From Macrostomum hystrix (Eukaryota; Animalia; Platyhelminthes), in assembly GCA_950097015.1 (NCBI GenBank), contig CATNEN010000038.1, positions 28,706,001-28,770,000 on the forward strand: a stretch of 64,000 nucleotides of DNA. The letters run 5' to 3'. The position numbers were made by a program, and so were the translations under genes. Below, piece by piece: positions 28,084 to 48,705 of this stretch (the first letter of the stretch is position 1; each line of letters starts with the position of its first letter). A model generated the notes under the pieces. That model did no database searches. It saw only the letters and a program-made list of their open reading frames with translations, and had not been told where the DNA came from.

Positions 28084-31000
28084 TTAACCGGCGTAGGAGA
28101 AACCTAGCAGCTTTCGACGATCCTTCGGCTGCGGCTTCGGCTTGATTATCTTCTTCGGCTTTGGTGGCTGCACGTTGATGATCTTCTTGATCTTCTTTAC
28201 CTTCAGTCGGAGCATCCAGTGTCTCCAACGCTTCAGGTAACTAAGGCAGTCCTTGCAGCTAACCTGACCCATCAGCTTCACACTGTGAGAGCACTTGGAC
28301 CGACTAGCCGTGAATGTGATCTGGTACAGGTTGCGCTGGTTGCGCACACACTTGCATCCGAGAACCAGCTTCTTCTGCACGCCATGGCGACAGTCTAAGC
28401 AATTTTTTAAAGGAGGGTGTTCTAGCTTCTGGATCTAGTCTATATATTAAAAGCTAAAATGCACCTCCGAATTGAAATTGAAAGTCTAGAATTACCTGGC
28501 TGGCAGTCGAAGTAGGCAACCACTGTTGATTTTGAAACACAAGTGAACAGGCCGCTGGCAGACTTTGTACGCCTGCTAGAAACAAACAGAAGTCGACGCA
28601 CTCCGTGGAAGCAGGTGGAGACGATGTAGAAACCACGCGAGCAACGAGGCGGCTCGGCGCAGCGGATGCGTCTCAAAACAAGACTCTTGGCACGGCAGAC
28701 TCCGCGAACACGAATGTAAATTGTCTTAACAACCCGATGGAAACCCTTGATGCACTTCTTCTCAATGACTGTGATTCCCTTTTTGCAAGCTAAAATACGA
28801 ACGTGTGTGAAAAAATTTATGTAAATTCCAAACCAAAAATAAAACTATATGTAATAAAAAGTACTTACGACAGGGAATCTTCTTGACAACACGCTCGCTA
28901 TGGACACGACATTTGCCGTCCTTGAACTTGTAAATGATCTGGATGAATTTTCTATAACCAGAGCGCTTAGAGCAAGGCAAAACTCTCTTCTTTGTCGGGC
29001 AAACAACTGGAGCGTGGCAAGGCACACGAGACACGACGACGTTTTTGCGGCATCGAAGAACACAGATCGATTTGCGACATGTCTTTGCCACAGAATAAGT
29101 TATTGTGCGCTCCTCGCGGAACTTCCGTGAACCAATGCAAGGAATCTTAACAACCTTAACTTTCGGGCACTTAACAGGGCACGGGAAGTGCTTAGCAACA
29201 GTGTGCTTCTTGCACTTAGGATAACTGCCAGTAAACCAGGTTGTTATTACCGACCGGTAACGCCTCTTGCCACCACACTTGGTTACGCGTGGGATCTTCT
29301 TGGTATTGCAGAAATGGGGCGCAACGCATGGGACAGCTGAACGTGTGACGTGCCGAACGCACTTCTGACGGCACTTCGGTGGAAGACTCTTGGTGCAAAT
29401 GATCTTACCAACATAAAAAATAGTAGTTGTCACACGATTCTTTACTCCCTTGAGACAACGCTTAACGATCTTCTTTGACTTCGGACAAGGAATCGGAGCT
29501 GAAAAAAAACAAGTCCATATGCAAAAAAAGCAAAACAACATTGCTCAAATTCTAAAAAAATATTTGTTACTTACGACACGGAGCTCTCTTAACAATCTTC
29601 GAGGTGTACGACACACAACGTCCACCAATAGCCTTGTAGAAAACTTTGACGACATATTGATGAGTTGAGTCTTTCCTACACCGACGTAGGACAGTCTTGC
29701 TAAAGCATTTTACTTTCGGGCACTTGATCTTAGTGATTGTCTGCTTCCTGACGCACACACCAGCGCGATCGAAGAACACCACCTTGGTCGCCTTCCTGTA
29801 GCCCTTGTGGCACTTCTTGTCGATGAGCAGCAGCGGCTTCTTGTTGCACTTGCACTTCACGATGGACACCTTGACGTTCTTCTTGTGGCACACGTAGCCG
29901 GTCTTGTACTTGCGCGACTCGTAGAAGCTCAGGTAGGTCGAAGTGAATCCGGCTTGACACTTTTTGCCCACAGTCGTCTCGTGATAGTGGTTCTGGTGGG
30001 AGGTGCAGCCACCGCAGCGAACGCGTCGCACAATCTTGCTACGCCAGACGCAGCGTCCGCGGATCAGACTGCGGTACTTGACACTGAAGGTTCTGAAGTT
30101 CTTCACGCACTTCGAAGTGTGGTAAGACAGCACAAAGCGGCACTTGACGCCCGGCTTTTTGCATGCCTTCCTGGCTGAGCGCTTGTGCTTCTTCACGCAG
30201 ATGGTCTTGCAGTGGCGCTTACCAGACTTCGGGGCACCTAGAAAAGGTAAAGCGATTTCTCAGTCTAATCCCACAAAGCATTTCAGGTGAACACAGTCAA
30301 TGAAATGTGCGCAATAGTAATATATGCTTACGCAGACAGAGCTTCTTCTTCTCGAAGTAGTAGGTGGTGGTGTAGGAGTGCGAGTTCTTCTTCGAGCACC
30401 GAGTGTGCACCTTGTACGGCTTCTTGCACCGATGCGGAACAGGTGGCGGGCACGAGACGCGCGAGTGGATCAGCTTCGTGTAGCAGTGGAGGGTGCAGAT
30501 CGACTTGCTGCACCTCTTCTTCACGTAGGAAGTCGCGATGGTGAGCGTTCGGTACTTTCTGCCCTTGCCGCACGACGTTCGCTTGACGGTCTTCGACTTC
30601 GGACATGTGACTGGGCACGGGATGTGCTTGGCGATTCTGTGCTTCTTGCACAGCTTGCCCTGGCGAGTGTTCCAGGTGGTGATGACAGATCGGTAGCGCC
30701 TCTTTTTGCCGCACGTCGTGACCTTGACCTTCTTGATCGTGTCGCAGGGTGGAGGTGTCTCGCAACGTGTAGCCGAGCGGGTCACTCGCTTTGTGCACAC
30801 CTGATGGCACAAAATCGGCCTCGTCTTTGTGCACACAATCTTGCCAGAGTAGAAGGTTGTGATGGTGTAGCGGAGCTTGGCTCCCTTTGTGCACCTCGTG
30901 AGGATGCGCTTTGACTTCGGACATTCACGTGGAGCTGAAAAGCAAAGCATGCATTTTTACTTTTTCGCTGCAAACTATTGTTATGTAAAACTAACACCGC

Positions 31001-34000
31001 AGATGTTGCTGTTCAATACACTTACGGCAGAGCAAGCGGGCCTTTGTCTCTCGCTTGTAGACGATGCAAACACCGCGCACATTCTTGTAGTACACCTGAA
31101 TCTTGTACTTGTAGGCAGAGTGCTTATGGCACTTGGTCCAGTAGAACGGAGGCTGTTTGCAACGACGATCTGGCGGCTTGACTTCGCACTTCTTTCGGCT
31201 GCGCAGAACCTTCTTTTCACACCTCACAGTGCACTTGCCCTTGTGAACACACGAGCGACGGACAGTGTAAGTGACGATTGTCTTTACTGAGAACTTGGCG
31301 TCCTTCACGCAAGGCTTGCGGATGATCTGAGTCTTTGGACACACCAGCGGGCACGGGTAGCGCTTGGTGGTCGTGTGCTTCTTGCAAATTCCGCCGACGG
31401 GACGATACTTGATTGTGATGAACTCTCGGAATCGACGCTTGCCGCCGCACTTGGTCGCGCGGATGTAGTCGCGCTTGCATTTGACGATTTTGCACGGATT
31501 CGACGATCGCTTGACCTTCTTGGTGCAGGTCTGGGTGCAGCGGGGAGGCAGAGACCGAGTGCACCTGATGCTCGACACGTAGAAGATGACAGTCTTTGTG
31601 CGATTGATCGCGCCGTTCTTGCACTCAGTGCGGATGGTCTTTGCAGCGGGGCACTTCCTTGGCGCTGCAACGACAGAGAAATTTTAAAGCATCTAGAATA
31701 CACTAGAATCTGGTAACTTTTGATGAGGTACTCTTCAAACACAGACGAATTGTGTACTTACGGCATGGGAGCTTCTTGATGACCTTTCTGCTCTTGGGGA
31801 CGCACTTCTTTCCGTTCCACTTGAAAGAGACCTGAGTGATCACGCGGAAGGCCCTGTGCTTCTTGCAATGACGAATGATTGTCTTGTCGGAGCAATCCCT
31901 TTTGTAGACGCAACGCTTCCTTGGAGACGTCTTGTGCTTCTTCACGCAGATCGTCTTGCATCGGTGCGGTCCGCTCGTTGATTTTCCTGTAGTATCGAAG
32001 TGAGAAAATGTAAACCAAAAAGAACAGCTACAAAATGTTGTAAATCATATTTCAGACAAATACGTATTTTTTTGCGATGCTTACTGAGGCACAGCTTCTT
32101 CTTCTCGAAGTAGTAGGTGGTGGTGTAGGAGTACAATCTCTTGTTGATGCACCGAGTGTGCACCTTGTACGGCTTCTTGCACCGATGCGGAACAGGTGGC
32201 GGGCACGAGACGCGCGAGTGGATCAGCTTCGTGTAGCAGTGGAGGGTACAGATCGACTTGCTGCACCTCTTCTTCACGTAGGAAGTCGCGATGGTGAGCG
32301 TTCGGTACTTTCTGCCCTTGCCGCACGACGTTCGCTTGACGGTCTTCGACTTCGGACATGTGACTGGGCACGGGATGTGCTTGGCGATTCTGTGCTTCTT
32401 GCACAGCTTGCCCTGGCGAGTGTTCCAGGTGGTGATGACAGATCGGTAGCGCCTCTTTTTGCCGCACGTCGTGACCTTGACCTTCTTGATCGTGTCGCAG
32501 GGTGGAGGTGTCTCGCAACGTGTAGCCGAGCGGGTCACTCGCTTTGTGCACACCTGGTGGCACAAAATCGGCCTCGTCTTTGTGCACACAATCTTGCCAG
32601 AGTAGAAGGTTGTGATGGTGTAGCGGAGCTTGGCTCCCTTTGTGCACCTCGTGAGGATGCGCTTTGACTTCGGACATTCACGTGGAGCTGGAATTGAAAT
32701 GTTTACTTAGCCCATATTTTCCTGAGTATGGAAAGAAAATAATTAACCTGAAACTTGTCGGTGTGGCAGTGCTGTTTTAGTAAATGTATTAGTAACACTT
32801 ACGGCAGAGCAAGCGGGCCTTTGACTCTCGCTTGTAGACGATGCAAACACCGCGCACATTCTTGTAGTACACCTGAATCTTGTACTTGTAGGCAGAGTGC
32901 TTGTGGCACTTGGTCCAGTAGAACGGAGGCTGTTTGCAACGACGATCTGGCGGCTTGACTTCGCACTTCTTTCGGCTGCGCAGAACCTTCTTTTCACACC
33001 TCACAGTGCACTTGCCCTTGTGAACACACGAGCGACGGACAGTGTAAGTGACGATTGTCTTTACTGAGAACCTGGCGTCCTTCACGCAAGGCTTGCGGAT
33101 GATCTGAGTCTTTGGACACACCAGCGGGCACGGGTAGCGCTTGGTGGTCGTGTGCTTCTTGCAAATTCCGCCGACGGGACGATACTTGATTGTGATGAAC
33201 TCTCGGAATCGACGCTTGCCGCCGCACTTGGTCGCGCGGATGTAGTCGCGCTTGCATTTGACGATTTTGCACGGATTCGACGATCGCTTGACCTTCTTGG
33301 TGCAGGTCTGGGTGCAGCGGGGAGGCAGAGACCGAGTGCACCTGATGCTCGACACGTAGAAGATGACAGTCTTTGTGCGATTGATCGCGCCGTTCTTGCA
33401 CTCAGTGCGGATGGTCTTTGCAGCGGGGCACTTTCTTGGCGCTGCAACGACAGAAATTTTAAAGCATCTAGAATACACTAGAATCTGTTGACTTTTGATA
33501 AGGTACTCTTCAAACACAGACGAATTGTGCACTTACGGCATGGGAGCTTCTTGATGACCTTTCTGCTCTTGGGGACGCACTTCTTTCCGTTCCACTTGAA
33601 AGAGACCTGAGTGATCACGCGGAAGGCCCTGTGCTTCTTGCAATGACGAATGATTGTCTTGTCGGAGCAATCCCTTTTGTAGACGCAACGCTTCCTTGGA
33701 GACGTCTTGTGCTTCTTCACGCAGATCGTCTTGCAAACCTTCTTTCCACCTGATGCCGGCTTTCCTTTGCCCATGTCTTGAAATTAGAAAGAAAATTTGT
33801 TTGAAAATTTGTTATTGAAGCTGTATTCTCTTGCGATTTTGTTTGTCTGATTTAGTCTTTCTTCGTAAACAGTTCTCACCCTGGCAAACTTCGCGGGCAA
33901 CGCTGCCAACAATGGAGTCGAGCTTGTTGAAGTCACCTGCACGCCAGAACCTTCCCCTGCTTGAGATGCCCTTCAGTTCGTCTCTGGAATCGATTTGATA

Positions 34001-37000
34001 TGGTAGGACTACTCAATTACTGCTCAGTTTAGCTTGTTTGTGATGTAGATCGTAAATTTCGTATGCTAGCGATGCTTACGCTTCTCCCTTTGGAAGCTAG
34101 AAAAAGCCTATGCGAAGATGGGAATCAAAACTTACGGGTTTATCTTGTCAGTGACGCTCGGGTCAGGGTTATAGATTCCGACTGACACAAACCGAGCGCC
34201 TTTCTTCTTAAGAACGCTTGCTGATGCAATGGCGTCTCCCATTGTGCTCTTGCCGTCGGTGATGACAACAACAACAAATGGCACGCCGGCTCTCCTCTTC
34301 GGGAAAATTTCGCTGTCGACAAGATCGATAGCTGCGTAGGTCATAGTGACGCCTTCTTCCCTTGGCAGCTTGGACATTGCGGCCAGGACTTGCGACTTGG
34401 TGTTGTACTTATCGAGGTTGAAAACCAGCTTCGGAGTAGTCGAAAAGGTAACCACGGCGACGCGGACACCAGTTGGTGAGACGCCCATTTTGCGAACAAT
34501 GTGCTGCACGAACTGCGATTCCTTTGCAAAGTCAGCATCATGAATGCTCGTCGAAGAGTCGAGAACAAAGACGAGATCGGCAACCTTGCTACAAGTGCGA
34601 CTTGGAGGCACGATTAGGCCTGTGCACAGCTTCTTCTTCTCGAAGTAGTAGGTGGTGGTGTAAGAATACAATCTCTTGTTGATGCACCGAGTGTGCACCT
34701 TGTACGGCTTCTTGCACCCATGCGGAACAGGAGGCGGGCACGACACGCGAGTGTGGAGCGTCTTCTTGTCGCAGTAAAGAGTGCAGATCGACTTGCGGCA
34801 CCTCTTCTTTACAGAAAAGGTAACAATCGTGAGCGTTCTGTACTTCCTGCCTTTGCCGCACGAAGTTCTCTTGACGGTCTTGGACTTCGGGCATACCAGT
34901 GGACACGGGTAGTGCTTGACAATCTTGTGCGCCTTGCAGCCTTTGCCGACACGAGAGTTCCAGGTGGTGATGATAGATCGGTAGCGCCTCTTTTTGCCGC
35001 ACGTCGTGACCTTGACCTTCTTGGTGGTGTCGCAAGGTTGGGGTACTCCACACGGAACGGCAGAACGCGTCAAACGCTTGATGCACCTCTGACTGCACAC
35101 TTGTGGAGTTGTCTTGCTGCAGGTGATCTTGCCGATGTAAAAGATGGTTGTGGTGACACGGTGGCTCGCTCCCTTCTTGCAGTGCCGGACAATCTTTCTC
35201 GACTTCGGGCATGGCCGTGGAGCTGAAGAAGAAGAAGAATATCTTTTTTTCTCATTTTCGGAATATGCGCAGTAAAATGAATTTGTGTATGAAAGCAAGT
35301 ATCACGTAAAACTTACGGCAAGGGATTCGCTTGGTCGTGATGCGCTTGACCGGAACGCAACGCCCGCGAACTCGCTTGTAGTACACCTTGATCAGATATT
35401 TGTAAGCTGAGTGTTTCGTACAGTGCTTCAAGACGGCCTTCACCTTGCACGCCTTCACAACTGGCTTGCATGTCTTTGTCTTGCGAACGACGACATTTTT
35501 AACGCACTTGGTGACGCACTTTCCCTTGTGAACACAAACACGCCTGACAGTGTAGGTAATGAATAACTTGACTTCGTGCGAGCTGCCCTTGGAGCAAGGC
35601 TTGCGGATGATCTGAGTCTTTGGGCAAATCAGCGGGCACGGGAAGCGCTTGGTGGTCGTGTGCTTCTTGCAGACACCTCCGACAGGCAAATATTTGGTGG
35701 TGATAAATTCTCGGAATCGACGCTTGCCGCCGCACTTGGTCGCGCGGATGTGTTCGCTTTTGCATTTGACAATTTTGCACGGATTCGACGATCGCTTGAC
35801 CTTCTTGGTGCAGATCTGGGTGCAGTGTGGGGGCAGAGACCGAGTGCACCTGATGCTCGACACGTAGAAGATGACAGTCTTTGTGCGATTGATCGCGCCG
35901 TGCTTGCAGTGCGTGCGGATTGTCTTTGCACGTGGACAGGGTCTCGGAGCTGCAAAGTCAGAGGAGAATGCGTAATTCAATTTTACTGTTTCTTCAATGA
36001 TGAAGAAATAAAATTCAAAAAGGTAAACTGAAAGAGAAAGGTAATTTCTTACGGCAAGGCTGCTTGCGGATAATCGTAGTACGATATTTGCGACACTTGC
36101 CACCGGCAAGCTTGTAGGTGATTTGCAGGAACAGTCGGTATGCAGAGTGCTTTGTGCACTTCTTGACAATCATTGCCGGGTCGCAATGCATTGGTGGGAT
36201 CGGGCACTTGAGCTTGGTGATTGTCTGCTTCTTGACGCACACACCAGCGCGATCGAAGAACACCACCTTGGTCGCCTTCCTGTAGCCCTTGTGGCACTTC
36301 TTGTCGATGAGCAGCAGCGGCTTCTTGTTGCACTTGCACTTCACGATGGACACCTTGACGTTCTTCTTGTGGCACACGTAGCCGGTCTTGTACTTGCGCG
36401 ACTCGTAGAAGCTCAGGTAGGTCGAAGTGAATCCGGCTTGACACTTTTTGCCCACAGTCGTCTCGTGATAGTGGTTCTGGTGGGAGGTGCAGCCACCGCA
36501 GCGAACGCGTCGCACAATCTTGCTACGCCAGACGCAGCGTCCGCGGATCAGACTGCGGTACTTGACACTGAAGGTTCTGAAGTTCTTCACGCACTTCGAA
36601 GTGTGGTAAGACAGCACAAAGCGGCACTTGACGCCCGGCTTTTTGCATGCCTTCCTGGCTGAGCGCTTGTGCTTCTTCACGCAGATGGTCTTGCAGTGGC
36701 GCTTACCAGACTTCGGGGCACCTAGAAAAGGTAAAGCGATTTCTCAGTCTAATCCCACAAAGCATTTCAGGTGAACACAGTCAATGAAATGTGCGCAATA
36801 GTAATATATGCTTACGCAGACAGAGCTTCTTCTTCTCGAAGTAGTAGGTGGTGGTGTAGGAGTGCGAGTTCTTCTTCGAGCACCGAGTGTGCACCTTGTA
36901 CGGCTTCTTGCACCGATGCGGAACAGGTGGCGGGCACGAGACGCGCGAGTGGATCAGCTTCGTGTAGCAGTGGAGGGTGCAGATCGACTTGCTGCACCTC

Positions 37001-40000
37001 TTCTTCACGTAGGAAGTCGCGATGGTGAGCGTTCGGTACTTTCTGCCCTTGCCGCACGACGTTCGCTTGACGGTCTTCGACTTCGGACATGTGACTGGGC
37101 ACGGGATGTGCTTGGCGATTCTGTGCTTCTTGCACAGCTTGCCCTGGCGAGTGTTCCAGGTGGTGATGACAGATCGGTAGCGCCTCTTTTTGCCGCACGT
37201 CGTGACCTTGACCTTCTTGATCGTGTCGCAGGGTGGAGGTGTCTCGCAACGTGTAGCCGAGCGGGTCACTCGCTTTGTGCACACCTGATGGCACAAAATC
37301 GGCCTCGTCTTTGTGCACACAATCTTGCCAGAGTAGAAGGTTGTGATGGTGTAGCGGAGCTTGGCTCCCTTTGTGCACCTCGTGAGGATGCGCTTTGACT
37401 TCGGACATTCACGTGGAGCTGGAATTGAAATGTTTACTTAGCCCATATTTTCCTGAGTATGGAAAGAAAATAATTAACCTGAAACTTGTCGGTGTGGCAG
37501 TGCTGTTTTAGTAAATGTATTAGTAACACTTACGGCAGAGCAAGCGGGCCTTTGTCTCTCGCTTGTAGACGATGCAAACACCGCGCACATTCTTGTAGTA
37601 CACCTGAATCTTGTACTTGTAGGCAGAGTGCTTATGGCACTTGGTCCAGTAGAACGGAGGCTGTTTGCAACGACGATCTGGCGGCTTGACTTCGCACTTC
37701 TTTCGGCTGCGCAGAACCTTCTTTTCACACCTCACAGTGCACTTGCCCTTGTGAACACACGAGCGACGGACAGTGTAAGTGACGATTGTCTTTACTGAGA
37801 ACCTGGCGTCCTTCACGCAAGGCTTGCGGATGATCTGAGTCTTTGGACACACCAGCGGGCACGGGTAGCGCTTGGTGGTCGTGTGCTTCTTGCAAATTCC
37901 GCCGACGGGACGATACTTGATTGTGATGAACTCTCGGAATCGACGCTTGCCGCCGCACTTGGTCGCGCGGATGTAGTCGCGCTTGCATTTGACGATTTTG
38001 CACGGATTCGACGATCGCTTGACCTTCTTGGTGCAGGTCTGGGTGCAGCGGGGAGGCAGAGACCGAGTGCACCTGATGCTCGACACGTAGAAGATGACAG
38101 TCTTTGTGCGATTGATCGCGCCGTTCTTGCACTCAGTGCGGATGGTCTTTGCAGCGGGGCACTTCCTTGGCGCTGCAACGACAGAAATTTTAAAGCATCT
38201 AGAATACACTAGAATCTGTTGACTTTTGATAAGGTACTCTTCAAACACAGACGAATTGTGCACTTACGGCATGGGAGCTTCTTGATGACCTTTCTGCTCT
38301 TGGGGACGCACTTCTTTCCGTTCCACTTGAAAGAGACCTGAGTGATCACGCGGAAGGCCCTGTGCTTCTTGCAATGACGAATGATTGTCTTGTCGGAGCA
38401 ATCCCTTTTGTAGACGCAACGCTTCCTTGGAGACGTCTTGTGCTTCTTCACGCAGATCGTCTTGCAAACCTTCTTTCCACCTGATGCCGGCTTTCCTTTG
38501 CCCATGTCTTGAAATTAGAAAGAAAATTTGTTTGAAAATTTGTTATTGAAGCTGTATTCTCTTGCGATTTTGTTTGTCTGATTTAGTCTTTCTTCGTAAA
38601 CAGTTCTCACCCTGGCAAACTTCGCGGGCAACGCTGCCAACAATGGAGTCGAGCTTGTTGAAGTCACCTGCACGCCAGAACCTTCCCCTGCTTGAGATGC
38701 CCTTCAGTTCGTCTCTGGAATCGATTTGATATGGTAGGACTACTCAATTACTGCTCAGTTTAGCTTGTTTGTGATGTAGATCGTAAATTTCGTATGCTAG
38801 CGATGCTTACGCTTCTCCCTTTGGAAGCTAGAAAAAGCCTATGCGAAGATGGGAATCAAAACTTACGGGTTTATCTTGTCAGTGACGCTCGGGTCAGGGT
38901 TATAGATTCCGACTGACACAAACCGAGCGCCTTTCTTCTTAAGAACGCTTGCTGATGCAATGGCGTCTCCCATTGTGCTCTTGCCGTCGGTGATGACAAC
39001 AACAACAAATGGCACGCCGGCTCTCCTCTTCGGGAAAATTTCGCTGTCGACAAGATCGATAGCTGCGTAGGTCATAGTGACGCCTTCTTCCCTTGGCAGC
39101 TTGGACATTGCGGCCAGGACTTGCGACTTGGTGTTGTACTTATCGAGGTTGAAAACCAGCTTCGGAGTAGTCGAAAAGGTAACCACGGCGACGCGGACGC
39201 CAGTTGGTGAGACGCCCATTTTGCGAACAATGTGCTGCACGAACTGCGATTCCTTTGCAAAGTCAGCATCATGAATGCTCGTCGAAGAGTCGAGAACAAA
39301 GACGAGATCGGCAACCTTGCTACAAGTGCGACTTGGAGGCACTATTAGGCCTGTGCACAGCTTCTTCTTCTCGAAGTAGTAGGTGGTGGTGTAAGAATAC
39401 AATCTCTTGTTGATGCACCGAGTGTGCACCTTGTACGGCTTCTTGCAGCCGTGTCCGCTGCCACCGCACTTAGCCTTGCCTATTAGTGTTTTGCGCGGCT
39501 TGCAAACCTTTCCTTTTGCAACGTAGCGGATACGGAAGGTCCTTTTGTAGCCCCCAATGCAGGGTGTTGTCGTTGTGCGAGGCTTCTCACAGGACTTACC
39601 TACGAATCGTATGGGTTCAAATGCTAAGGAAAATTTTCTATTTGTCGCGTGAAATTTTGAAAATTTGTAGTGGCTTACATGTCCGTTTTCGAATAATAAC
39701 TTTGGCTTTGTGACAGGTTCGAGACTCCTCTCCTTGGTAAACTGTGACGTAGCTTGTAACAAAGCCGCTTGTGCACGTCTTGCCAATAGTAACCTGCTGG
39801 AAACTTCGCTGTTCGCTTGTACAGCCACCGCATGGAATCAGACGAATCAGCCTGCCATAAACTCGTACGCAAGGTCCGTCAGCTTGCACTCTCGCCAGAT
39901 GTGTCCAGTACACGCCACGGTATCTACTTCCTTTGCGCAGACAGTCTCTCTCGACGTGGATGGTAGCACTGAGTGGACAGCGCTTAGTGAGGCAGCGTCT

Positions 40001-43000
40001 CTTTGTGATTTGCAGCCTTTGGTAACTGCACTTGCCCTTGCGCGATGCGAAGAAGCTCGAGTAGACTGTCTTCTGGCCACCAGTGCACTTCTTGCCGATG
40101 GTGATGCGAAAGATGCGAATCTGATGCTTGGAGCAGCCTCGGCACGGGATTTTGCGAACGATCTTCGTGCGGACTCGCTTGCAGCTGCCGCCGCTAGCGC
40201 TGTAGAAGCCCCAGTAAATTTTACGGTAACCAGACTTACTGCAGCTTTTTTCAATGGTTAGTCGGCGTTTGACACAGCGGACTAAAAAGGTGTGTTGGAT
40301 TTCGAATTGAAACTCATAAGAGGCAATGTTAATTTTCTAATAACTAAAGCAACTCTCGTGTTCCTTACTCTTGCGACAGGAAAGCTTCTTTTGAACCAGG
40401 CGTCTGCTGCATCGCCAAACGCACTTCTTGCGGCTGCAATCGTGAATCTTGGACGTGTGAATTCGTGTTACAATCCTCAGGAGCGTCTTCGGATCACATT
40501 TTCCAACGTGGACCTTTGTTCCCTCCTTGCAGATGATGGCTGCAAAGTAATAAGAGGATTAACACGATAAAGAAGGCTATTTGCACTGAAATATTTCCCC
40601 CATTTTACAAACAAATGTGAAATATTCTTACGTTTACTGCAGCGAAGCTTCTTGACCTGCTTGTATGGCATGCATGTGTTTCGAACCATCTTATAAAACT
40701 TCTCAGTTCGAGTTTTGAAGCCGGCGACACACTTGCTAACCAGCACTCGGCGATACTTCGGGCAGCGAATCTTTAGAGCGCCGTGAACAGCCGGTTGAGC
40801 AACAAAGCTGATGCGCATGCGCAGGACGTATTTCGCCGCGAACTTCAGCTTGATCCAGGTGCGGATGTGAATGTAAACAGTGCTAATGACCTGCAGCGAT
40901 GCGTCGGTGACGTCGGGTCCAACGCCAATCACAAGGATGGAGACACTCATCTCCTGCAGTCTGGCTGTCTCGACTTCCACACTGCGGCCGTAGTCCGAAT
41001 CACCGGCGGTGATGACAATCAGCATCTTGGCGCTCTGACCCGCCGATTCGGTCAGGACCTGCTCGCGCACCAGCAATAGGGCATCGCCGATTGCTCGATG
41101 CTTACCGGTGAGTAGCTTCAGACCGTTGATGGCCGAGATGACGGCTGCTTGGTTTGTGTATTTGGTCAGACGGAAGGCCAGGCTAGCCGTGCTGGAGAAC
41201 AGGACAACGGAGACTCGAACACTCTTGGCACCGATCTTCATCTTGCGGATCATAGAGAGGACGAATTCCTTCTCGTAGCGGAAGTGCAGCTCGCCCAGGT
41301 CCTCGGTGGCCTGCATAACTAGGATGAGCTCCATGGCCTGACTGGCGAAGCACTCGCTCTTCTCGCAGCCACACGACTTCCTTTTCACAATCTTGGTGAC
41401 TGGGTTGCACTTGTTTAGCACCTTCACGAAGCCGATTTCCATTGTCTGGCTGAAGCCGTGCTTGCAGGGTGTCTTGTACCTGACTGCCGCCGGACACTTC
41501 AGAACACTGCTCATTGTCATTTGCACTGCAACGAATAATCAAAAAATACCATATTAGAAAGGAGTAAACAAAGTAAATTGCGGTTGAGATAAACTACAGC
41601 GACGACTCACTCTTCCAGCGAATGTGCATGTGGATGAACGCGTCAACTACGAACTCCAGACTGGCGAACTTGGGCACCCACACGTACTTTCCACCTGTGG
41701 CACGGCTCTTCCAGAAGGCCCTGGATAGTTTTGTTTATCGGGTGATTTGTGCGCTTTAGTTTTCGGTATTTGAGTGCTTAACATAGAAATTTTCATTCTG
41801 CAGAAAACATGCCTTTTTTATAAGAAAGAACTACAAAATCTGCATTGCCACTCACTGAGAAACGTCGTAGCCAACCATAACAGGCAGGAACGTGACGCCC
41901 TTACTTCCCAGATAGTTCACCTCGTCAGCGACGCTACGTCCTGAGTTCGAATCCACGCTAGTAAGCACCATGATCAGCTTGCCACTGAATCGGCGTCCCC
42001 TCTTTAGCACGCGCTTCCTGTAGAAGTACAGAGCCTCACCAAGGGCCACATTGCCGGCGGCACTAGTGTAGCGAGTGCGTCGAATCTTAGAAATAATGCG
42101 GGCCTTTGACGTGTCGAAGTCGAATAGCATGTGCGGCTTCGTGCCGGCCACGATCATGTTGACGCGCACGTGGAAGCGAGCCACTCGAAGGCGGTTGACC
42201 AACTGGGCGGCGAACTTGCGCCAACGCTGGAAGTTCTTGCCGTCGACCACGAAGGTCAGATCGATGGTGGAAGTTCCAACGCAGATGCCTTTGCGACAGC
42301 CCGCGCGGAAGATACGCTTAGCGATGCGTTTTTTGGGGGCTGTGAATGAAGGAACAATAATAATGATAATAATATTATATAATAAAAATAATATAATAAT
42401 AATAGTGTTCATATTTGCTGAAGGGCGGTGGGCAATGGCACATCATTTAGTGACACTAGATCCTGAGCACACGCACATAGATACCATACGTGTGCACATC
42501 TGCCCTGACTTTCTCATCGTCAGGCAGTAAAATCTTTCACTGTGCCTTGGAGGTTGTCCCTCAAGGGCGTAAATTGCACGACAAGTCCCCCAAGCTTTCT
42601 CTATGCTGAATGTGGCCTCCCGGAAGAATCGAGCTCATGGACCTTGGTGCGAGAGGTAGACGCGTTAGCCGCTCTGATACTCACTACGTTAAATGGAGGG
42701 AGTAAAGGTAAATAAGTTAATAAAGGTTCTCTTTGTCGAGCCTGCTACTTAGTGGTTAATTATTAAGGGTTGGGATACATTGGCTTAACAACTCAAGGTT
42801 CGAACCTCCCATTAAAGAACATTTTCTGTTATTAAAAGCACGTTTTTTTCAATTAACCACCTAGCGAAGAGTTCGGGAGTTTGAATCTCACAGAATGCCA
42901 CAGTAATCCGGGATAGAAATTTTTATATCCCCCTTAGTCATGAGAATGATGTAAGCAACGGCTTTCTAATTATCTACTTTCTGCCATCTGTGAGTATGCT

Positions 43001-46000
43001 TGTTGATAAATTTTTGCATAAGAAGTCACTATTGTGAGACCTATCCCCCATGAGCCCTGCCCCATAAAATGCACCAACCAACAAGTCCTGCTTCTCATCG
43101 GCTAGTGTATGAGATGCAGAGCTTAAAGCAGGCTTCATTCGTATAAACTAATGCGCAAAGTCTCGGCCAGGAGTTTTTAGAAGTGAAGGCTTTGAAGTTC
43201 GCAATAGCAGTCGGAGTCTGGGCGGAGTTGGGGTTGGTTCCAAGCCCAGAGACAGTTGGCCCTCGTGGCACGAGGCACAGCACTATCCTAACTGAAACGA
43301 GCCAACCTTGCCGTGTAAGTCTCTATAGCTTTCCTATGCTCTGAGTTTTCAAATTATTTTTCTATTATTCTATTGTCCGTCTATTGTGCTCAACTGGATA
43401 ATTGAGCTTTGGCCTTTTAACCCAACCCTCCATCGCGCGCCAGCTACCGAAAGCCTATTCAAATATTCACGTGCGAGAGACGCTTTTGGAAGCCAACACG
43501 TGCTTTGACAGCCCCTGCTCGCTGCCTCTCTGTCTCACTCCTCCTGCCCCTGCTACTTCGCTTCATCAACCTAGATTCCATCGCCATCAAACAGCTGCAA
43601 TACCTGCCTCCTCTATTGTTCCATTATTCTACCGTTTCTGACTAGACTGGCCACAGAAAGCAGCAGAAATAAGAATTTATTATTATTATTCTAAATGCAA
43701 ACTAAGCGCGACAGTTGTGCGAGAGTCCAAACCCTTTCAGATGAGTGTAGCTTAATAGGGCCATCTAGAACACGAGAAAGAGCTGACACGCAACTCGTGG
43801 CACGTGTTCACCGACCCCGAAAGTCCGCTCTCTGCCGAGTGATAGCAATTGCAAAACTCTATTGCGTTTAAATTTAGTAAACAACAAGTCGATTCTGTTC
43901 TTTAAATCTTTAGACCTCTTCATCAAAACTTAAAGCAGACACACAAAAAGTATTTAATTATTTTCTTCCGCTTAACCAGTTCTACAAAATATTTCTCACT
44001 ATGTTTTCTTCTTTACGCCTTGAAGGTCGGGGGTTCGATTCCCGACTCTACTGGAACAATTTGCGTCCTGTAGCAAGACACTTAACTCTACATTGCTTCA
44101 GTTCACCCAGCTGTTAAATGGGTACCAGCATCAGCTGGGATAATTGAAGGTGGGTGTGGCGTCCCCCCAGTCCGTGGACTGAACAGCTGTACGCAGCCTT
44201 CAGATGCGCCGCGCATTAGCTGCGGCTGTGCTGTCGGCTGCACATCTGACCCAATTGGGGCAGGTGTAATCAATTATTATTATATTCTTTACGCGCATTG
44301 CATGGTTTGATAATTCATCGGCACTTCTGATTTGAGGGCTTAGGGAGTAAATCCCAACCAGAAGTAAAAATGGTACTCTTGATAATAATAACAATTATAC
44401 GAGCGCTCGTAATTAGTTTATTACAACTATTTCGCTAATCGGACACAAGGTGTGCAGCCATCAGCGCAGCCGCAGCTATTGCGTGCGTACGGGTGTTCAG
44501 TCCATGGACTGGGGGGGGCGCCACAACTACATTTAATAATCTCAGCTGATTATGTAGCCAATACCCATTAAGGACACTAATTGTTCCAGTGGAATCAGGA
44601 ATCGAACCCCGACACTCAGAGCCTAAAAACCCCTGTCGTTGAAAAGGACTCATGATTCTTACTTGTTTCATTATAACTAGCTCTAACATGGGTATCAGCA
44701 TCAGCAGCCTTTGGAAGGGCTGCGTAATCAATCTCCTTAGCTAATAGATTTAGCCAAACTAAAATCACAGTACTTTTGTATCGAATTGAAGCAAATCGGA
44801 GGGCTAATCACACATATTTACTACAGAAAATACGTGAACGCCCGAAGAGTTTTAGAAGAACGAAACCAGAGACTGACTCACGAGTTCTCTTCATCGCTAA
44901 GTCGTCCACGCCTTCATCTTCCGCTTCGATTTCGGCCACCGATTCAGCGGCCGCGGCGGCATCGTCCGTGTCGCCGAATGCGCCCGGGTTGCCGTCCAAC
45001 TCGATGGTCTCTGGCACCTCGATGGCGTCCTTCATGTCCTCCAGCATTTGCTATCGGGTGGGGAAAGATTGGTTTGTTAATATGTATTTCATTGATTTAA
45101 CTTGATATTTGTCTATAACAATAATAATAATAATAGTATATGTTGGAAGGCTCTGGGCCATGGCGCATCATCTGGTGACACAAGACCCGCAGACAGCGAG
45201 GAGGCAATTCTGCTCATTTAGCTGACTCCTGAGCAGACACACAGATACTATACGCATGCACACGCTCACACAGGTGTGTACATCTGCACTGAATTTCCCC
45301 TGAGGGCATAAATTGCATGACAAGCCCCCAAGCCTTCTCTCCGCTGATGCGCCCTAATGTAATGTTGTCTCGCAGCGGAATCGAGCTCAGGGACCTTGGC
45401 GCGACAGGAAAATACGTCATCCGCTTTGCCACTGACCCCCTTAATATTTGTCTATAGAAAACTCCTTGACCATGGACATCCGTCAAACAGTTTTTTAATT
45501 CATTAAAAATCTAAAGAACCAGCATTGTTGTTAGTCAGAATATGAACAAATTGGGCCTATCTGGCCAATTGGGTCACGCTGTGTACCACGATTTCAGTCC
45601 CTTACCTTCGCTACCCGAATTTCAACCTTAACTATTGTTGCTATGACCCATTTTAATTTAATTTAAGCGCTTTGTGACAGCAAAACAAGGTGATGTTAAC
45701 AAGAAAAAAATTATATACAAAAAATTTTTTGCCGGCCATGTTAGCAGATAATTTGTCCCCAAAACTCATGGTGAACCGTAATAGAAATAATCTTTAAACA
45801 TTGGTGTAAATTCCAGAATTTCGTGTACAACCTAAGAGTTTATGTAAATCTTGAAACCCGGCCTAACAATATAGGCGTCAAGCCAGTTAAAAAGTTCAAG
45901 TGAGTGCGAAAAAAATGAAAAAACATTCAAATCATGCAAACAACATTAAGCTCACACTACTCATACAATTAAGTAAATAAAAAGTGTAAAATCGTGGCTA

Positions 46001-46141
46001 CATGTATAAGCCAAAGCCGAATATACTCACCTCTGTCGTCTGCTCCGCAGTCACCTCATTGGTGGCAGCGCCGGCTGTCAGAACGCACACGAGCAGCAGC
46101 AGGAGGACCGCGCGGCTGCTCCTAGTAGCCGTCGACGGCAT
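28084..46141 (-). CDS. Giant secreted Lys/Arg/Cys-rich repeat protein with four VWA domains (~4066 aa, 26 exons)
   Basis: Exons 46141-46031, 45050-44882, 42339-41856, 41720-41611, 41525-40632, 40539-40369, 40281-39679, 39599-38867, 38714-38611, 38507-38268, 38172-37534, 37418-36816, 36721-36053, 35949-35317, 35222-34136, 33983-33880, 33776-33537, 33441-32803, 32687-32085, 31986-31762, 31664-31026, 30934-30332, 30237-29575, 29498-28869, 28789-28496, 28394-28084. All GT-AG with matching phases, 12201 nt. Signal peptide MPSTATRSSRAVLLLLLVCVLTAGA; VWA motifs such as DLVFVLDSSTS and VVVVITDG. Confidence 0.85.
29717..30937. repeat. Intragenic segmental duplicate of 36201-37421
   Basis: Offset 6484; exon and intron sequence almost identical. 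Confidence 0.9.
31018..31961. repeat. Intragenic duplicate of 32795-33736 (and 37526-38467)
   Basis: Offset about 1777; 639-nt exon, intron and next exon nearly identical. Confidence 0.9.
32094..34716. repeat. Intragenic segmental duplicate of 36825-39447
   Basis: Offset 4731; five exons and four introns essentially identical, including the VWA domain. Confidence 0.92.
33880..34584 (-). other. VWA domain 4 of the giant protein (intact MIDAS)
   Basis: ADLVFVLDSSTSI...RVAVVTFST...GVTMT...VVVVITDGKS. Confidence 0.9.
38611..39315 (-). other. VWA domain 3 of the giant protein (intact MIDAS), same sequence as VWA4
   Basis: Same translation as 33880-34584. Confidence 0.9.
40820..41335 (-). other. 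VWA domain 2 of the giant protein (degenerate MIDAS)
   Basis: MELILVMQATED...RVSVVLFSS...MLIVITAGDS...ILVIGVG. Confidence 0.85.
41611..42270 (-). other. VWA domain 1 of the giant protein (basic, degenerate MIDAS)
   Basis: IDLTFVVDG...RVNMIVAG...KLIMVLTS...FLPVMVG. Confidence 0.8.
42356..42686 (-). mobile_element. SINE family 1 copy (intronic)
   Basis: Family match; AT-rich tail ends just upstream of the acceptor at 42340. Confidence 0.8.
44018..44283 (+). mobile_element. 5'-truncated SINE family 2 copy (intronic)
   Basis: Near-identical to 21830-22095. Confidence 0.9.
44440..44612 (-). mobile_element. Degenerate SINE family 2 copy, inverted
   Basis: GTTCAGTCCATGGACTGGGGGG, ATTGTTCCAGTGGA and GGAATCGAACCCCGAC are the reverse complement of family 2. 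Confidence 0.75.
45118..45441 (-). mobile_element. SINE family 1 copy with internal deletion (intronic)
   Basis: Family match with an (ATA)n tail at the left end. Confidence 0.8.
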
Positions 46142-46367
46142 TGCCTGTGCTATGAAACTTTTCTCTAAATTAACAAATTCTTCTGTTGCTTCACTTTGAA
46201 CTATAGGCCTAATACCCTATAAACTGATAGTATTGTAGACGATTCGAAAATCTGTTTTGGATCAACTATTGGCACCCTTCTGTGTTTAGGACAATGCTTC
46301 GCTATAGCTCCGTTGTCGCAGATTTTTACTCTCTTTGCCCATCATCTTTTGTCGATTCGGCTGCCGC

Positions 46368-47405: not shown

Positions 47406-47962
47406 TCTTTCTATTGTCAGTCCTGTCTAAGCTGCTGGACACCATCAATTTTACCGAGAAGTCCCTAGAATTTTAGAAACGTTTCGGAGAAATCTCGAGA
47501 CAGCTTTCTAAATAGCTGCGCAGGTAAACAAGTCTGAAGCGGGTACAAAAGGGTCATTGTGAAAGAAGGCGCCTTTCGGGCTTTAAGAGACCTCAATTTC
47601 AAATTTTCGGCAGGGTTTGTTTTTGTTACTATCTATTGTCTGCCACCGGCCCCAAGTTTGATGCAGCTTCAATTTTTCATCGTGGCGCACGTGTTTGCCT
47701 TGCCAAGACCGAATCTGTTTTGTTGTTCTCAAATTGTTTATTCGCGTGCGTGCGTCAGCCAGTGGCTTGAGCAGCACGTGCAGTCCCGGTGGCCAAGTAG
47801 ATTGCAGCTTCAATTTCTGAGCTTGTCAAGCCAAGCGAGGGAAAAATTTGGCTGAGGTAAAGTAGCAACAGAAGGAGAAACAAAAATAAACAAAATATTA
47901 GGAGGAGAAGAATAAAAAGGAAACTAGTAAGGCTAAGGCTATAAGAAAAGAGAGAGGGATCG

Positions 47963-48241
47963 AGAGAGGAGAGTAGAGGGAGCTGAGGCGTGGGGAGAGA
48001 GGAGAGTAGAGGGAGCTGAGGCGTGGGGAGAGAGGAGAGTAGAGGGAGCTGAGGCGTGGGGAGAGAGGAGAGTAGAGGGAGCTGAGGCGTGGGGAGAGAG
48101 GAGAGTAGAGGGAGCTGAGGCGTGGGGAGAGAGGAGAGTAGAGGGAGCTGAGGCGTGGGGAGAGAGGAGAGTAGAGGGAGCTGAGGCGTGGGGAGAGAGG
48201 AGAGTAGAGGGAGCTGAGGCGTGGGGAGAGAGGAGAGTAGG
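47963..48241. repeat. Purine-rich minisatellite, 33-bp unit (GAGAGAGGAGAGTAGAGGGAGCTGAGGCGTGGG)
   Basis: About 8 perfect tandem copies. Confidence 0.95.
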
Positions 48242-48290
48242 GACCTTGGTGCGAGATGCAAACTGGTGAGACCACTCTGCCATGCACCCA
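48239..48290 (-). mobile_element. SINE family 1 head fragment
   Basis: AGGGACCTTGGTGCGAGA...AGACCACTCTGCCA matches the reverse complement of the SINE head. Confidence 0.6.
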
Positions 48291-48705
48291 GAAAAACAAA
48301 GTAAAACGATAGCGAATCATTTTTTCAGTCGAAGCATCATAGGACGCTACTTATTGATGAGTAGTCGCGCATGATTTTCCACTCGAAAGAAGTGTTGTTT
48401 CAATCCGAAAACAATAAATATTTTAATGTTTAAGAAGGCTGACATTAGAAACGTTGATGAAAAGCGCTAAATTGTGTTAAAAATAGACTTTTCATTCGAA
48501 CTTCGTACTACATTCAAAATAGCTTTGACCCAATTTTTGCTGGGGAGATAAAATTTCTATTTAGCAGAAGAGAAATTAATTACTATCCTTATACTCGTAT
48601 AGAGCATTCTTATTAGCATTTTCACCTTCACATAATATTTTAAAGGAAAAAGACTAAAAACAAGAGCATCAAACAAGAATCCCCGTAATTTAAATAGTAA
48701 TGAAC

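What the first reader, a model, noticed from the sequence alone, without database searches (positions are those of the whole stretch)
28084..46141. Giant (~4,066 aa) secreted polycationic Cys-rich VWA protein: candidate novel bioadhesive, mucus or rhabdite scaffold
Seen: the fragmented ORFs join into one 26-exon frame. The order is signal peptide, acidic pro-region, VWA, VWA, then about 3,000 aa of repeats dominated by K, R, C, T and V with very few acidic residues, two more VWA domains, and a Lys/Pro tail. Known: VWA domains mediate adhesion and cross-linking in invertebrate glues, and large K/R-rich, Cys-rich repeat proteins occur in flatworm adhesive secretions. I do not recognise this exact architecture. 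Inference: a disulfide-stabilised cationic fibre or gel former of a secretory gland.
Basis: partly seen in the sequence, partly recalled or inferred. Interest (0 to 1): 0.92.

Follow-up and report, generated by a model that had tools for sequence, protein, structure and literature searches.

The report
Giant secreted cationic cysteine-repeat VWA protein
This is a real, expressed flatworm (Macrostomum) gene for a roughly 4,000-residue secreted, very positively charged protein built from about 50 copies of an unclassified cysteine-framed beta module plus four VWA "sticky" domains; it probably forms part of a glue, cement or mucus, but where it is made and what it does are untested.

Summary
I rebuilt the model independently and got the same result: 26 minus-strand exons, a 12,201-nt CDS and 4,066 aa (K 14.8%, R 9.7%, C 7.3%, net charge about +819).

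- **RNA support:** single spliced contigs from two runs join exons 1-7 and the start of exon 8.
- **Orthologue support:** an uncharacterised M. lignano protein (BOX15_Mlig000187g2 / UniRef A0A1I8JHM6) is collinear with exons 1-18.
- **Unsupported part:** exons 19-26 rest on frame, splice signals and paralogy only.
- **Repeat module:** it matches no Pfam family, PDB sequence or solved fold, and is not a thrombospondin repeat. Among 1.84 billion proteins it occurs only in Macrostomum-type sequences. All 156 aligned Cys are conserved between the two species.
- **VWA domains:** VWA3 and VWA4 are identical and have a complete MIDAS site. Their nearest solved relatives are collagen VI and the mussel byssus protein PTMP1.
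- **Internal blocks:** these evolve in concert (100% identical within a species, 76% between species).
- **Not a known glue protein:** it is not ap1, ap2 or ap3.

A secreted cationic, disulfide-rich scaffold fits the sequence. The gland (adhesive, rhabdite, cement or other) is unknown.

The scan has flagged other giant polycationic VWA genes elsewhere in this genome, and has noted this same stretch twice before.

The parts
46031..46141 (-). Exon 1 coding part (aa 1-37): start codon at 46141. Signal-peptide-like N-terminus with a hydrophobic core at aa ~5-32 and an AGA|A cleavage-type motif. The 5' UTR extends to at least ~46312.
   Evidence: RNA contigs in X5/X6/X9; hydropathy; N-terminus conserved in M. 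lignano P0001/P0006
44882..45050 (-). Exon 2: acidic region (32% D+E; aa 25-93 net -18), ending in the basic site MKRT / PPKKR
   Evidence: RNA joints 46031/45050 and 44882/42339; composition
41855..42339 (-). Exon 3: basic site (PKKRIAKR) and most of VWA1 (no MIDAS)
   Evidence: Pfam VWA E 7.3e-13; RNA contig; MIDAS check
41611..41719 (-). Exon 4: C-terminal part of VWA1
   Evidence: RNA contig; 92% identical to M. lignano
40632..41525 (-). Exon 5: one Cys module, VWA2 (no MIDAS), then the first K/R/C module
   Evidence: Pfam VWA E 7.5e-28; RNA contig
40369..40539 (-). Exon 6: K/R/C module exon (30% K+R, 11% C)
   Evidence: RNA contig
39679..40281 (-). Exon 7: type-C repeat exon, diverged copy
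38867..39599 (-). Exon 8: two to three modules plus most of VWA3 (MIDAS DSSTS..T..D complete)
   Evidence: Pfam VWA E 4.7e-32; junction matches M. lignano (RKRN|CKSC); the X6 contig ends at 39418, 30 nt into the duplicated block (inference); PDB neighbours collagen VI, PTMP1 and integrin I domains
38611..38714 (-). Exon 9: last helix of VWA3 with the closing Cys
38268..38507 (-). Exon 10: 'a'-type 80-aa module exon (34% K+R)
37534..38172 (-). Exon 11: type-A repeat exon (213 aa, phase 1-1)
36816..37418 (-). Exon 12: type-B repeat exon (201 aa), used for the homology searches and the structure model
   Evidence: AF2 mean pLDDT 78.7, all-beta hairpins; no Pfam, PDB or Atlas match; only 4 library hits
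36053..36721 (-). Exon 13: type-C repeat exon (223 aa)
   Evidence: AF2 low confidence (52) but again long hairpins
35317..35949 (-). Exon 14: older type-A copy (73% aa identity to E11; dN/dS 0.38)
34136..35222 (-). Exon 15: older type-B copy (dN/dS 0.29 against E12) fused to most of VWA4, which is identical to VWA3 and MIDAS-complete
33880..33983 (-). Exon 16: last helix of VWA4 (identical to E9)
33537..33776 (-). Exon 17: 'a'-type exon (identical to E10)
32803..33441 (-). Exon 18: type-A exon (99.5% identical to E11). Last exon covered by the truncated M. lignano model.
32085..32687 (-). Exon 19: type-B exon (97.5% identical to E12)
   Evidence: no RNA or orthologue support
31762..31986 (-). 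Exon 20: 'a'-type exon with a different 5' end
   Evidence: junction analogous to E12|E13; no RNA or orthologue support
31026..31664 (-). Exon 21: type-A exon (99.5% identical to E11)
30332..30934 (-). Exon 22: type-B exon (100% identical to E12)
29575..30237 (-). Exon 23: type-C exon. Its 5' two-thirds are near-identical to E13; its 3' third is diverged.
28869..29498 (-). Exon 24: diverged type-B exon (49% identical to E12)
28496..28789 (-). Exon 25: unique C-terminal Cys-module exon
   Evidence: no Pfam match
28084..28394 (-). Exon 26: last Cys module, the Lys/Pro tail (net +14 over the last 45 aa) and the stop at 28084-28086. There is no hydrophobic C-terminal anchor. ATTAAA lies 240 nt and AATAAA 592 nt downstream.
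32077..34716 (.). Recent internal duplicate of 36808-39447 (99.3% over 2,641 nt; 0 of 473 intron mismatches). Further blocks: 29716-30937 = 36200-37421 (99.8%), and 31018-31960 = 32795-33735 = 37526-38466 (about 99%).
42340..44881 (-). Intron 2 (2,542 nt), holding high-copy repeat fragments
   Evidence: RNA contig skips it; DNA-run word depth 1e5-1e6 at 42300-42700 and 43900-44700

Best explanation
One real, transcribed 26-exon gene of a Macrostomum flatworm encodes a soluble secreted protein of about 4,000 aa.

After a signal peptide and a short acidic leader ending at a conserved basic (PKKR-type) site, the mature chain is a string of about 50 small disulfide-framed, Lys/Arg-rich beta modules. 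These are packed three to six per symmetric phase-1 exon. Four disulfide-closed VWA 'beads' interrupt the string, and two of them carry a complete metal-ion (MIDAS) binding site.

The most likely role is a structural scaffold of an extracellular deposited material, such as gland glue, egg cement, mucus or rhabdite matrix:
- The rigid cationic beta modules would bind polyanions (sulfated or carboxylated glycans, acidic partner proteins, negatively charged surfaces) by charge.
- The MIDAS VWA domains would make metal-dependent protein-protein cross-links, as matrix and byssal VWA domains do.

The array is kept uniform by gene conversion or unequal crossing-over inside the gene.

Shown here: gene structure, expression of the 5' third, orthology, domain content, Cys and charge conservation, purifying selection, and concerted evolution. 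Inferred: secretion, leader cleavage, disulfide bonding, polyanion binding, cross-linking, and the tissue.
For: - Model and frame.
- Spliced RNA contigs joining E1-E8 in two runs, with partial support from a third.
- M. lignano orthologue collinear through E18, 75.1% identical over 2,642 aa, no junction indels.
- Only one hydrophobic segment (the signal peptide) and no anchor.
- Four Pfam VWA domains. MIDAS complete in VWA3/4 only. Nearest solved VWA domains are collagen VI alpha-3, mussel proximal thread matrix protein 1 (4.7e-20) and the collagen-binding integrin I domains.
- Cys columns invariant among paralogues at 36-73% identity. 156 of 156 Cys and 89% of basic positions conserved between species.
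- dN/dS 0.29-0.38 between the older paralogous exons.
- AF2 model of E12 is confident (pLDDT 78.7, 160 of 200 residues at 70 or above) and consists entirely of long beta hairpins.
- Blocks are 100% identical within each species and 76% between species.
- Precedents: polycationic cohesive proteins in flatworm glue (PMC6410801), and a different giant VWA transcript (RNA815_13, 16 kb) specific to the shell/cement glands of M. lignano (PMC4490696).
Against: - No expression site, proteomic detection or binding data exist for this gene or its orthologue. No paper cites the accessions.
- M. lignano attachment was explained by two other proteins, ap1 and ap2 (PMC6410801), so a main role in the duo-gland glue is not expected.
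- Exons 19-26 lack RNA or orthologue support.
- The copy number of the near-identical blocks was not checked against reads.
- The signal peptide was judged by hydropathy and motif only.
- Disulfide pairing and inter-module geometry are not established (pTM 0.42).
- The type-C exon model is low-confidence (pLDDT 52).
Confidence: 0.6

Rival explanations
1. It is a resident extracellular-matrix protein, a collagen-VI-like or matrilin-like microfibril or basal-matrix component made by parenchymal, muscle or epidermal cells. In this reading it is not a gland secretion released to the outside. The cationic modules would bind matrix glycosaminoglycans.
For: The closest solved VWA relatives are collagen VI alpha-3 and alpha-2 and the collagen-binding integrin I domains. 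The multi-VWA 'beads on a string' layout is typical of matrix proteins.
Against: There is no collagen triple-helix segment and no other matrix module. The family is confined to Macrostomum-type sequences, whereas core matrix proteins are widely conserved. Rapid intragenic homogenisation and expansion are more typical of secreted biomaterials.
Confidence: 0.15
2. It is a defensive polycation: either an antimicrobial or anti-predator mucus component, or a polyprotein cut into cationic disulfide-stabilised beta-hairpin peptides.
For: The modules are cationic, disulfide-framed beta hairpins. That is the general design of beta-hairpin antimicrobial peptides (my own knowledge; not tested here).
Against: Only one R-x-[KR]-R site occurs in the whole protein, and there are no regular spacer or cleavage motifs between modules. 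Modules are joined directly by Cys-Pro linkers across phase-1 exons. VWA domains are not expected in a peptide precursor.
Confidence: 0.08
3. The gene is real but shorter. Some or all of the 97.5-100% identical internal blocks (about 1,380 aa) would be assembly duplications, giving a true product of roughly 2,700-3,300 aa with the same architecture.
For: The blocks are 99-100% identical including introns. The transcript contigs break where the duplicated block begins.
Against: The genome is in 42 large contigs, which suggests long-read assembly (inference). The M. lignano model also carries the second VWA-a-A block as a 100% identical copy in the same order. The copies are mosaic, with differing ends: E13 and E23 differ in their last third, and E12 and E19 differ in a patch. 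This is not what a simple collapse or expansion artefact gives.
Confidence: 0.15
4. The exons belong to two or more separate transcripts, for instance a 5' VWA gene and a 3' repeat gene.
For: No RNA evidence was obtained for exons 9-26.
Against: One contig joins E1 to E8, which covers both VWA domains and the first repeat exons. The M. lignano model runs through E18 in one frame. All repeat exons are phase 1-1 with no in-frame stop, and no exon downstream of exon 1 resembles a start or signal-peptide exon.
Confidence: 0.05

Closest known systems
Uncharacterised M. lignano orthologue (PAA94323.1 / BOX15_Mlig000187g2, UniRef A0A267H7R9; longer model UniRef A0A1I8JHM6)
   Same: It has the same N-terminus, acidic leader, basic site, VWA order and repeat-exon order through E18. 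Identity is 75% overall and every Cys is conserved.
   Different: The deposited models are truncated inside the repeats (2,381 and 2,693 aa) and are named only 'hypothetical' or 'VWFA domain-containing'. No paper mentions them.
Flatworm temporary-adhesion proteins Mlig-ap1 / Mile-ap3 / Tmed-ap3 (cohesive, Lys/Arg-rich) and ap2
   Same: They are giant, secreted, strongly cationic, repetitive proteins of free-living flatworms. Their charge-based binding to polyanions is the proposed working principle (PMC6410801, PMC9229212).
   Different: ap1, ap2 and ap3 use low-complexity K/R or GRK repeats plus C-lectin, vWD-C8-TIL, EGF, LDL and TSP-1 domains. This protein has folded Cys-framed modules and type-A VWA domains and none of those domains. 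It is not a family member.
Mussel proximal thread matrix protein 1 (PTMP1; PDB 4cn8) and collagen VI VWA arrays
   Same: The VWA domains are of the same matrix type (E 4.7e-20 and 7.8e-95 summed), sit in extracellular load-bearing or adhesive materials, and carry a MIDAS site (present here in VWA3/4).
   Different: PTMP1 is a small two-VWA protein, and collagen VI has triple-helical segments. Neither has the polycationic Cys modules, which make up about 70% of this protein.
Thrombospondin type-1 repeat / pleiotrophin-midkine domains
   Same: They are of similar size (about 50-55 aa), with a three-stranded disulfide-rich beta layout and basic residues. Local motifs such as C-G-K-G-R-K-Y-R recall the TSR C-G-x-G-x-x-x-R-x-R. 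Pleiotrophin, a heparin binder, appears at noise level in both fold searches.
   Different: The Pfam TSP_1 model finds 58 repeats in this genome and none in this gene. hhalign against the genome's own TSRs gives 0.2% probability. There is no Trp ladder. The structural matches are not significant (Foldseek E at least 0.56; VIA Z at most 4.2).
RNA815_13 of M. lignano (shell/cement-gland-specific 16-kb VWA transcript; PMC4490696)
   Same: It is a giant VWA-annotated secreted protein of the same genus, localised to a gland secretion.
   Different: Its N-terminus differs (MGWSPSL... against MPSTAT...), so it is another gene. It serves only as a precedent for where such proteins can be made.

Membership tests
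VWA domain (Pfam PF00092) | Match to the family profile above the curated cut-off (23.8 bits) | tested here: met
   49.5, 98.3 and 112 bits for VWA1, VWA2 and VWA3. VWA4 is identical in protein to VWA3.
VWA domain (Pfam PF00092) | Complete MIDAS metal site (D-x-S-x-S ... T ... D) | tested here: met
   Met for VWA3 and VWA4 (DSSTS, T, D). Not met for VWA1 (DGK--) or VWA2 (QATED).
Flatworm adhesion protein ap1 (Mlig-ap1 type) | Core of C-type lectin, vWD-C8-TIL and an EGF array, flanked by low-complexity K/R regions (PMC6410801, PMC8621496) | tested here: not met
   No C-lectin, vWD, C8, TIL or EGF hit in any exon scanned, even at E up to 10. The cationic part is Cys-framed and folded, not low-complexity.
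Flatworm adhesion protein ap2 (Mlig-ap2 type) | vWD/TIL/LDL N-terminal part, 221-255-aa central repeats and C-terminal TSP-1 repeats | tested here: not met
   None of these domains was found. The TSP_1 search of the genome gives no hit in this gene.
Thrombospondin type-1 repeat (PF00090) | Profile match, W-x-x-W ladder and six-Cys pattern | tested here: not met
   No hit in this gene among 58 genome hits. hhalign probability 0.2%. Trp is 0.6% of residues.
Gel-forming mucin / von Willebrand factor type polymers | VWD-C8-TIL assemblies, a PTS (Pro/Thr/Ser) mucin region and a C-terminal cystine knot | tested here: not met
   No VWD, C8, TIL or CTCK hits exon by exon. Thr sits in beta strands of Cys modules, not in PTS tracts. 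A cystine knot split across E25/E26 could not be searched as a joined sequence.
Collagen VI / matrilin-type matrix proteins | VWA arrays joined to a collagen triple helix (collagen VI) or to EGF plus a coiled coil (matrilins) | tested here: not met
   VWA similarity is present. There is no Collagen, EGF or coiled-coil hit, and Gly is 4.9%.
New Macrostomum Cys-module family (this gene, its M. lignano orthologue and P0004) | Module Ca-x(8-11)-Cb-x(18-21)-Cc-x(4-11)-Cd, Lys/Arg-rich, in phase 1-1 exons of about 200 aa | tested here: met
   About 50 such modules. Cys columns are invariant among paralogues and P0004 and between species. There are only four library clusters, three of them M. lignano and one an unnamed public-assembly (Logan) fragment.

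The most novel reading that the evidence does not exclude
The repeat would be a new extracellular domain family: a rigid, polycationic, triple-disulfide beta-hairpin unit found only in macrostomid flatworms. This protein would be the main scaffold of a secretion whose protein make-up I found no account of in the papers searched. Candidates are the basic, rod-shaped rhabdites of the epidermis, or an egg-cement or adhesive component missed by trypsin-based proteomics. It would work by charge-driven condensation with polyanionic glycans, locked by MIDAS-VWA cross-links.
Probability: 0.15. Interest if true: 0.8.

Novelty: new variant of a known kind. Interest (0 to 1): 0.5.

Why it matters
Giant cationic secreted proteins are the working parts of flatworm glue and are studied as templates for wet adhesives. 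This gene shows a different construction from ap1. Its charge sits on folded, disulfide-locked beta modules with no detectable relative in Pfam, the PDB or 1.84 billion proteins, and these modules are combined with matrix-type MIDAS VWA domains.

If its tissue turns out to be rhabdite, cement or adhesive gland, it would give a molecular handle on a secretion that is still poorly described. It would also provide a compact (about 50 aa), probably heparin-binding module for structural study.

The locus is also a clean example of concerted evolution inside one coding gene. Blocks are 100% identical within each of two species but only 76% identical between them.

Tried and rejected
**Gene model**
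- An unconstrained dynamic-programming splice model over-split the gene into non-coding frames, so I discarded it. The frame-constrained junction scan replaced it.
- A bacterial promoter/terminator scan of the 3' end was uninformative for a eukaryotic gene.

**Searches on the repeat exons that found nothing**
- Pfam at E up to 10: only chance hits (Pox_E10, TBP, Mrx7).
- PDB sequence search with E12 at E up to 10: 0 hits.
- ESM Atlas, all clusters and named clusters: no usable hit.
- Foldseek against the PDB: best E 0.56.
- VIA wide: best Z 4.2, generic hairpin sheets such as levivirus coat proteins.

**TSR hypothesis**
- Rejected.

**Wider homology**
- A profile search of 5.8 billion proteins with the paralogue alignment added nothing beyond P0004.

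**Literature**
- Searches for the orthologue's accessions, for Macrostomum with rhabdites or VWA, and for rhabdite chemistry found no characterisation.
- RNA815_13 (PMC4490696) was considered as a possible orthologue and rejected because its N-terminus differs.
- The supplements of the seminal-fluid screen (PMC5977470) hold no VWA entry.

**Tools and limits**
- The joined spliced protein was never sent to any search, fold or family tool. All such searches were done exon by exon by reference, and the joined sequence was used only inside scripts for composition, alignment and hydropathy.


Full report

The region 28,084-46,141 carries many long minus-strand stop-free stretches. I laid public runs on the unique 5' part, 40,300-46,299. 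Two runs behave as spliced transcriptome assemblies. In each, a single contig (2,838 and 2,895 nt) joins six exons:
- 46299+..46031
- 45050..44882
- 42339..41855
- 41719..41611
- 41525..40632
- 40539..40369

The contigs continue 725 and 785 nt further downstream. Every skipped part reads CT..AC on the plus strand, which is GT..AG on the minus strand. A third run, under a different organism label, supports two of the joints. A DNA run shows none of these joints.

The contig's loose end maps to 40252-40281, the start of exon 7. The six confirmed exons translate into one open frame of 646 aa from the ATG at 46141.

For the rest of the gene, an unconstrained splice search over-split the sequence. 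I then fixed the reading frames from the Lys/Arg/Cys-rich stop-free segments and scanned each junction. Nearly every repeat exon ends ...TGCC|gtaag and resumes after ...cag| in phase 1, with introns of 76-152 nt.

The curated model has 26 exons, a 12,201-nt CDS, one terminal stop and 4,066 aa.

One inference supports the E7|E8 junction. The X6 contig runs 785 nt past 40369. That equals exon 7 (603 nt) plus 182 nt of exon 8, so it ends at 39418, which is 30 nt (k-1) into the internally duplicated block that begins at 39447. A de Bruijn assembler would break at exactly that point. This supports the 79-nt intron between E7 and E8 and suggests the transcript continues into the repeats.

**Independent support from an orthologue**

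An exhaustive phmmer search of 1.84 billion representative proteins with exon 12 found four clusters:
- Three are M. lignano proteins: PAA94323.1 / BOX15_Mlig000187g2 (2,381 aa), two mis-modelled fragments, and, within the first cluster, UniRef A0A1I8JHM6 (2,693 aa).
- One is an unnamed 249-aa fragment from a public assembly.

The M. lignano protein begins with the same signal-peptide-like sequence, acidic stretch and basic site. It is collinear with my exons 1-18, exon by exon, at 61-92% identity. A global alignment gives 75.1% identity over 2,642 aa, with no indel tied to an exon junction.

Exons 1-18 are therefore supported. Exons 19-26 rest on frame continuity, splice signals and their being copies of supported exon types.

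Earlier notes of this scan place the genome in Macrostomum, probably M. hystrix. My data fit that (the closest relatives are M. lignano proteins at about 75% identity), but I did not test the species.

**Anatomy**

*N-terminus.* Residues ~5-32 are the only hydrophobic segment in the whole protein, with an AGA|A motif. There is no membrane span or C-terminal anchor. Residues 25-93 are acidic (net -18) and end at MKRT/PPKKR/IAKR. The PKKR site is conserved in M. lignano. A charge of -18 cannot offset the total of about +819, so this is not a charge-masking propiece.

*VWA domains.*
- VWA1 (E3-E4) and VWA2 (E5) lack a MIDAS site.
- VWA3 (E8-E9) and VWA4 (E15-E16) are identical in sequence and have a complete DxSxS..T..D site.
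- Each VWA is bracketed by Cys residues near its two ends.
- The nearest solved relatives of VWA3 are collagen VI alpha-3, mussel proximal thread matrix protein 1 (4.7e-20) and the collagen-binding integrin alpha-1/alpha-2 I domains.

*Repeats.*
- The remaining ~2,900 aa are exons of four types: 'a' (80 aa), A (213 aa), B (201 aa) and C (223 aa).
- They are built from a module Ca-x(8-11)-Cb-x(18-21)-Cc-x(4-11)-Cd, and about 50 modules fit this signature.
- After residue 646 the composition is K 15.8%, R 10.0%, T 9.2%, V 9.0% and C 8.1%.
- The mature chain has an even 294 Cys.

*C-terminus.* The chain ends in a Lys/Pro tail (net +14 over 45 aa).

**What the module is**

No Pfam family matches any repeat exon, even at E up to 10. 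There is also no PDB sequence match and no ESM Atlas cluster.

AlphaFold2 on exon 12, with an alignment of six paralogous or homologous exons, gives mean pLDDT 78.7, with block means of 77-93 for residues 1-160. The fold is all-beta. It repeats a unit of about 52-55 aa: a short strand plus a long hairpin with 12-16-residue strands. The type-C exon, with only three aligned sequences, gave a low-confidence model (pLDDT 52) that again consists of long hairpins.

Fold searches found nothing convincing:
- Foldseek best E-value 0.56.
- VIA-align best Z 4.2, below that tool's stated background. The hits are generic hairpin sheets.

The unit size, the three-strand layout and motifs such as CGKGRKYR recall thrombospondin type-1 repeats, so I tested that idea. 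The Pfam TSP_1 model finds 58 repeats in this genome but none in this gene. hhalign against the genome's own TSRs gives 0.2% probability. The module is best treated as an unclassified family.

**Selection and evolution**

- Cys columns are invariant among paralogues that are only 36-73% identical.
- Between the two species, 156 of 156 aligned Cys are conserved and 89% of basic positions remain basic, while Ile, Phe, Glu, Asn and Ala are only 51-58% conserved.
- Older paralogous exons give dN/dS of 0.29-0.38.
- In the 220-Mb genome the module occurs only in this gene.
- The unnamed fragment P0004 is about 55-62% identical to copies from both species, so it probably comes from a third, more distant taxon.

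The gene contains very recent internal duplicates:
- 36808-39447 = 32077-34716, at 99.3% over 2,641 nt. There are no mismatches in 473 intron positions.
- 36200-37421 = 29716-30937, at 99.8%.
- A threefold ~940-nt block at about 99%.

The VWA-a-A block is 100% identical between its two copies in this species and also in M. lignano, yet only 75.8% identical between the species. That is the signature of concerted evolution by gene conversion or unequal crossing-over. Two caveats apply. The M. lignano model may itself be partly collapsed. The copy number here was not checked against reads, because the single read-laying run had been used on the 5' part. If every block at 97.5% identity or more were an artefact, the product would still be about 2,700 aa with the same architecture.

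**How it most likely works**

The sequence supports a soluble secreted protein whose mature part is a long chain of small, disulfide-locked, strongly cationic beta modules carrying four VWA beads.

By analogy with established systems, I infer two activities:
- **Polyanion binding.** The modules would bind polyanions by charge. The charge-based cohesion of Mlig-ap1 can be blocked by heparin (PMC6410801).
- **Cross-linking.** The MIDAS VWA domains would make metal-dependent cross-links. Matrix and byssal VWA domains are the nearest solved relatives.

Together these would give a gel, fibre or cement.

The tissue is open. A different giant VWA transcript of M. lignano, RNA815_13, is specific to the shell and cement glands (PMC4490696). 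A WSC-domain protein in the same paper is prostate-specific. Reproductive glands are therefore as plausible as adhesive organs or rhabdites. Because ap1 and ap2 account for attachment in M. lignano (PMC6410801), a leading role in the duo-gland glue is less likely.

**Comparison with the known, and novelty**

It is not a member of the ap1, ap2 or ap3 families, the gel-forming mucins or VWF, collagen VI or the matrilins, or the TSR or pleiotrophin families. The membership rows give the details.

Its orthologue is deposited but only as a truncated hypothetical protein, and no paper mentions it. The kind of protein (giant, secreted, repetitive, VWA-bearing biomaterial or matrix protein) is known. 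The cationic Cys module and this architecture are new. I therefore rate it a new variant of a known kind.

Other notes of this scan describe further giant polycationic VWA genes elsewhere in this genome. This locus thus belongs to a wider Macrostomum theme. The same stretch was also noted as s1-854634 and s1-854616.

**Limits**

- The joined spliced protein was not sent to any search or fold tool. All such work was done exon by exon by reference.
- No signal-peptide predictor was available.

Noticed in passing
window 42300-42700, 43900-44700, 45100-45500: Introns 1 and 2 of the gene hold fragments of very high-copy repeats (summed word depth 1e5-1e6 in the DNA run, against about 80 for unique sequence). 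Many chimeric joints between 42.4-42.6 kb and 45.2-45.4 kb suggest two copies of one repeat family.
   Followed up: no
window 4038-4910, 8106-8887, 13874-14641, 17120-18007, 47758-49333, 50466-52070, 56936-57370, 58654-59927: There are many tandem minisatellite arrays that read as long stop-free periodic translations in several frames. Some coincide with strong GC skew, 0.33-0.43 at 8-10 kb and 48-52 kb.
   Followed up: no
window 39600-39678 versus 39624-39678: The E7|E8 junction has two frame-compatible acceptors, giving a 79-nt or a 55-nt intron. The M. lignano sequence (RKRN|CKSC) and the end point of the X6 contig favour the 79-nt intron. The other could be a minor isoform adding 8 aa.
   Followed up: partly
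window 10199-16556, minus strand: Stop-free stretches here include a motif typical of tubulin-tyrosine-ligase-like enzymes (VNHFPGS...GRKDRLW), which suggests a neighbouring TTLL-type gene. This rests on my own recognition of the motif and was not tested.
   Followed up: no
window 41356: Run X9, filed under a different organism label, carries G>A here in an otherwise near-identical spliced contig. This could be a strain or sister-species variant within VWA2.
   Followed up: no
M. lignano proteins P0002 (UniRef A0A1I8F7R1) and P0003 (UniRef A0A1I8FSL3): These database entries, named 'Ig-like domain-containing' and 'SWIM-type domain-containing', are frame-shifted mis-models of the same repeat gene. 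They show in-frame module stretches alternating with out-of-frame text, so their names are misleading.
   Followed up: partly
window 32085-32200 versus 36816-36930 (ends of E19 and E12/E22): All 19 mismatches in the 2.64-kb duplicate lie in exons and none in introns. The protein-level differences I noticed lie at the end of the type-B exon (INKRLYSY versus SKKNSHSY). This looks like a gene-conversion tract boundary rather than random divergence.
   Followed up: partly
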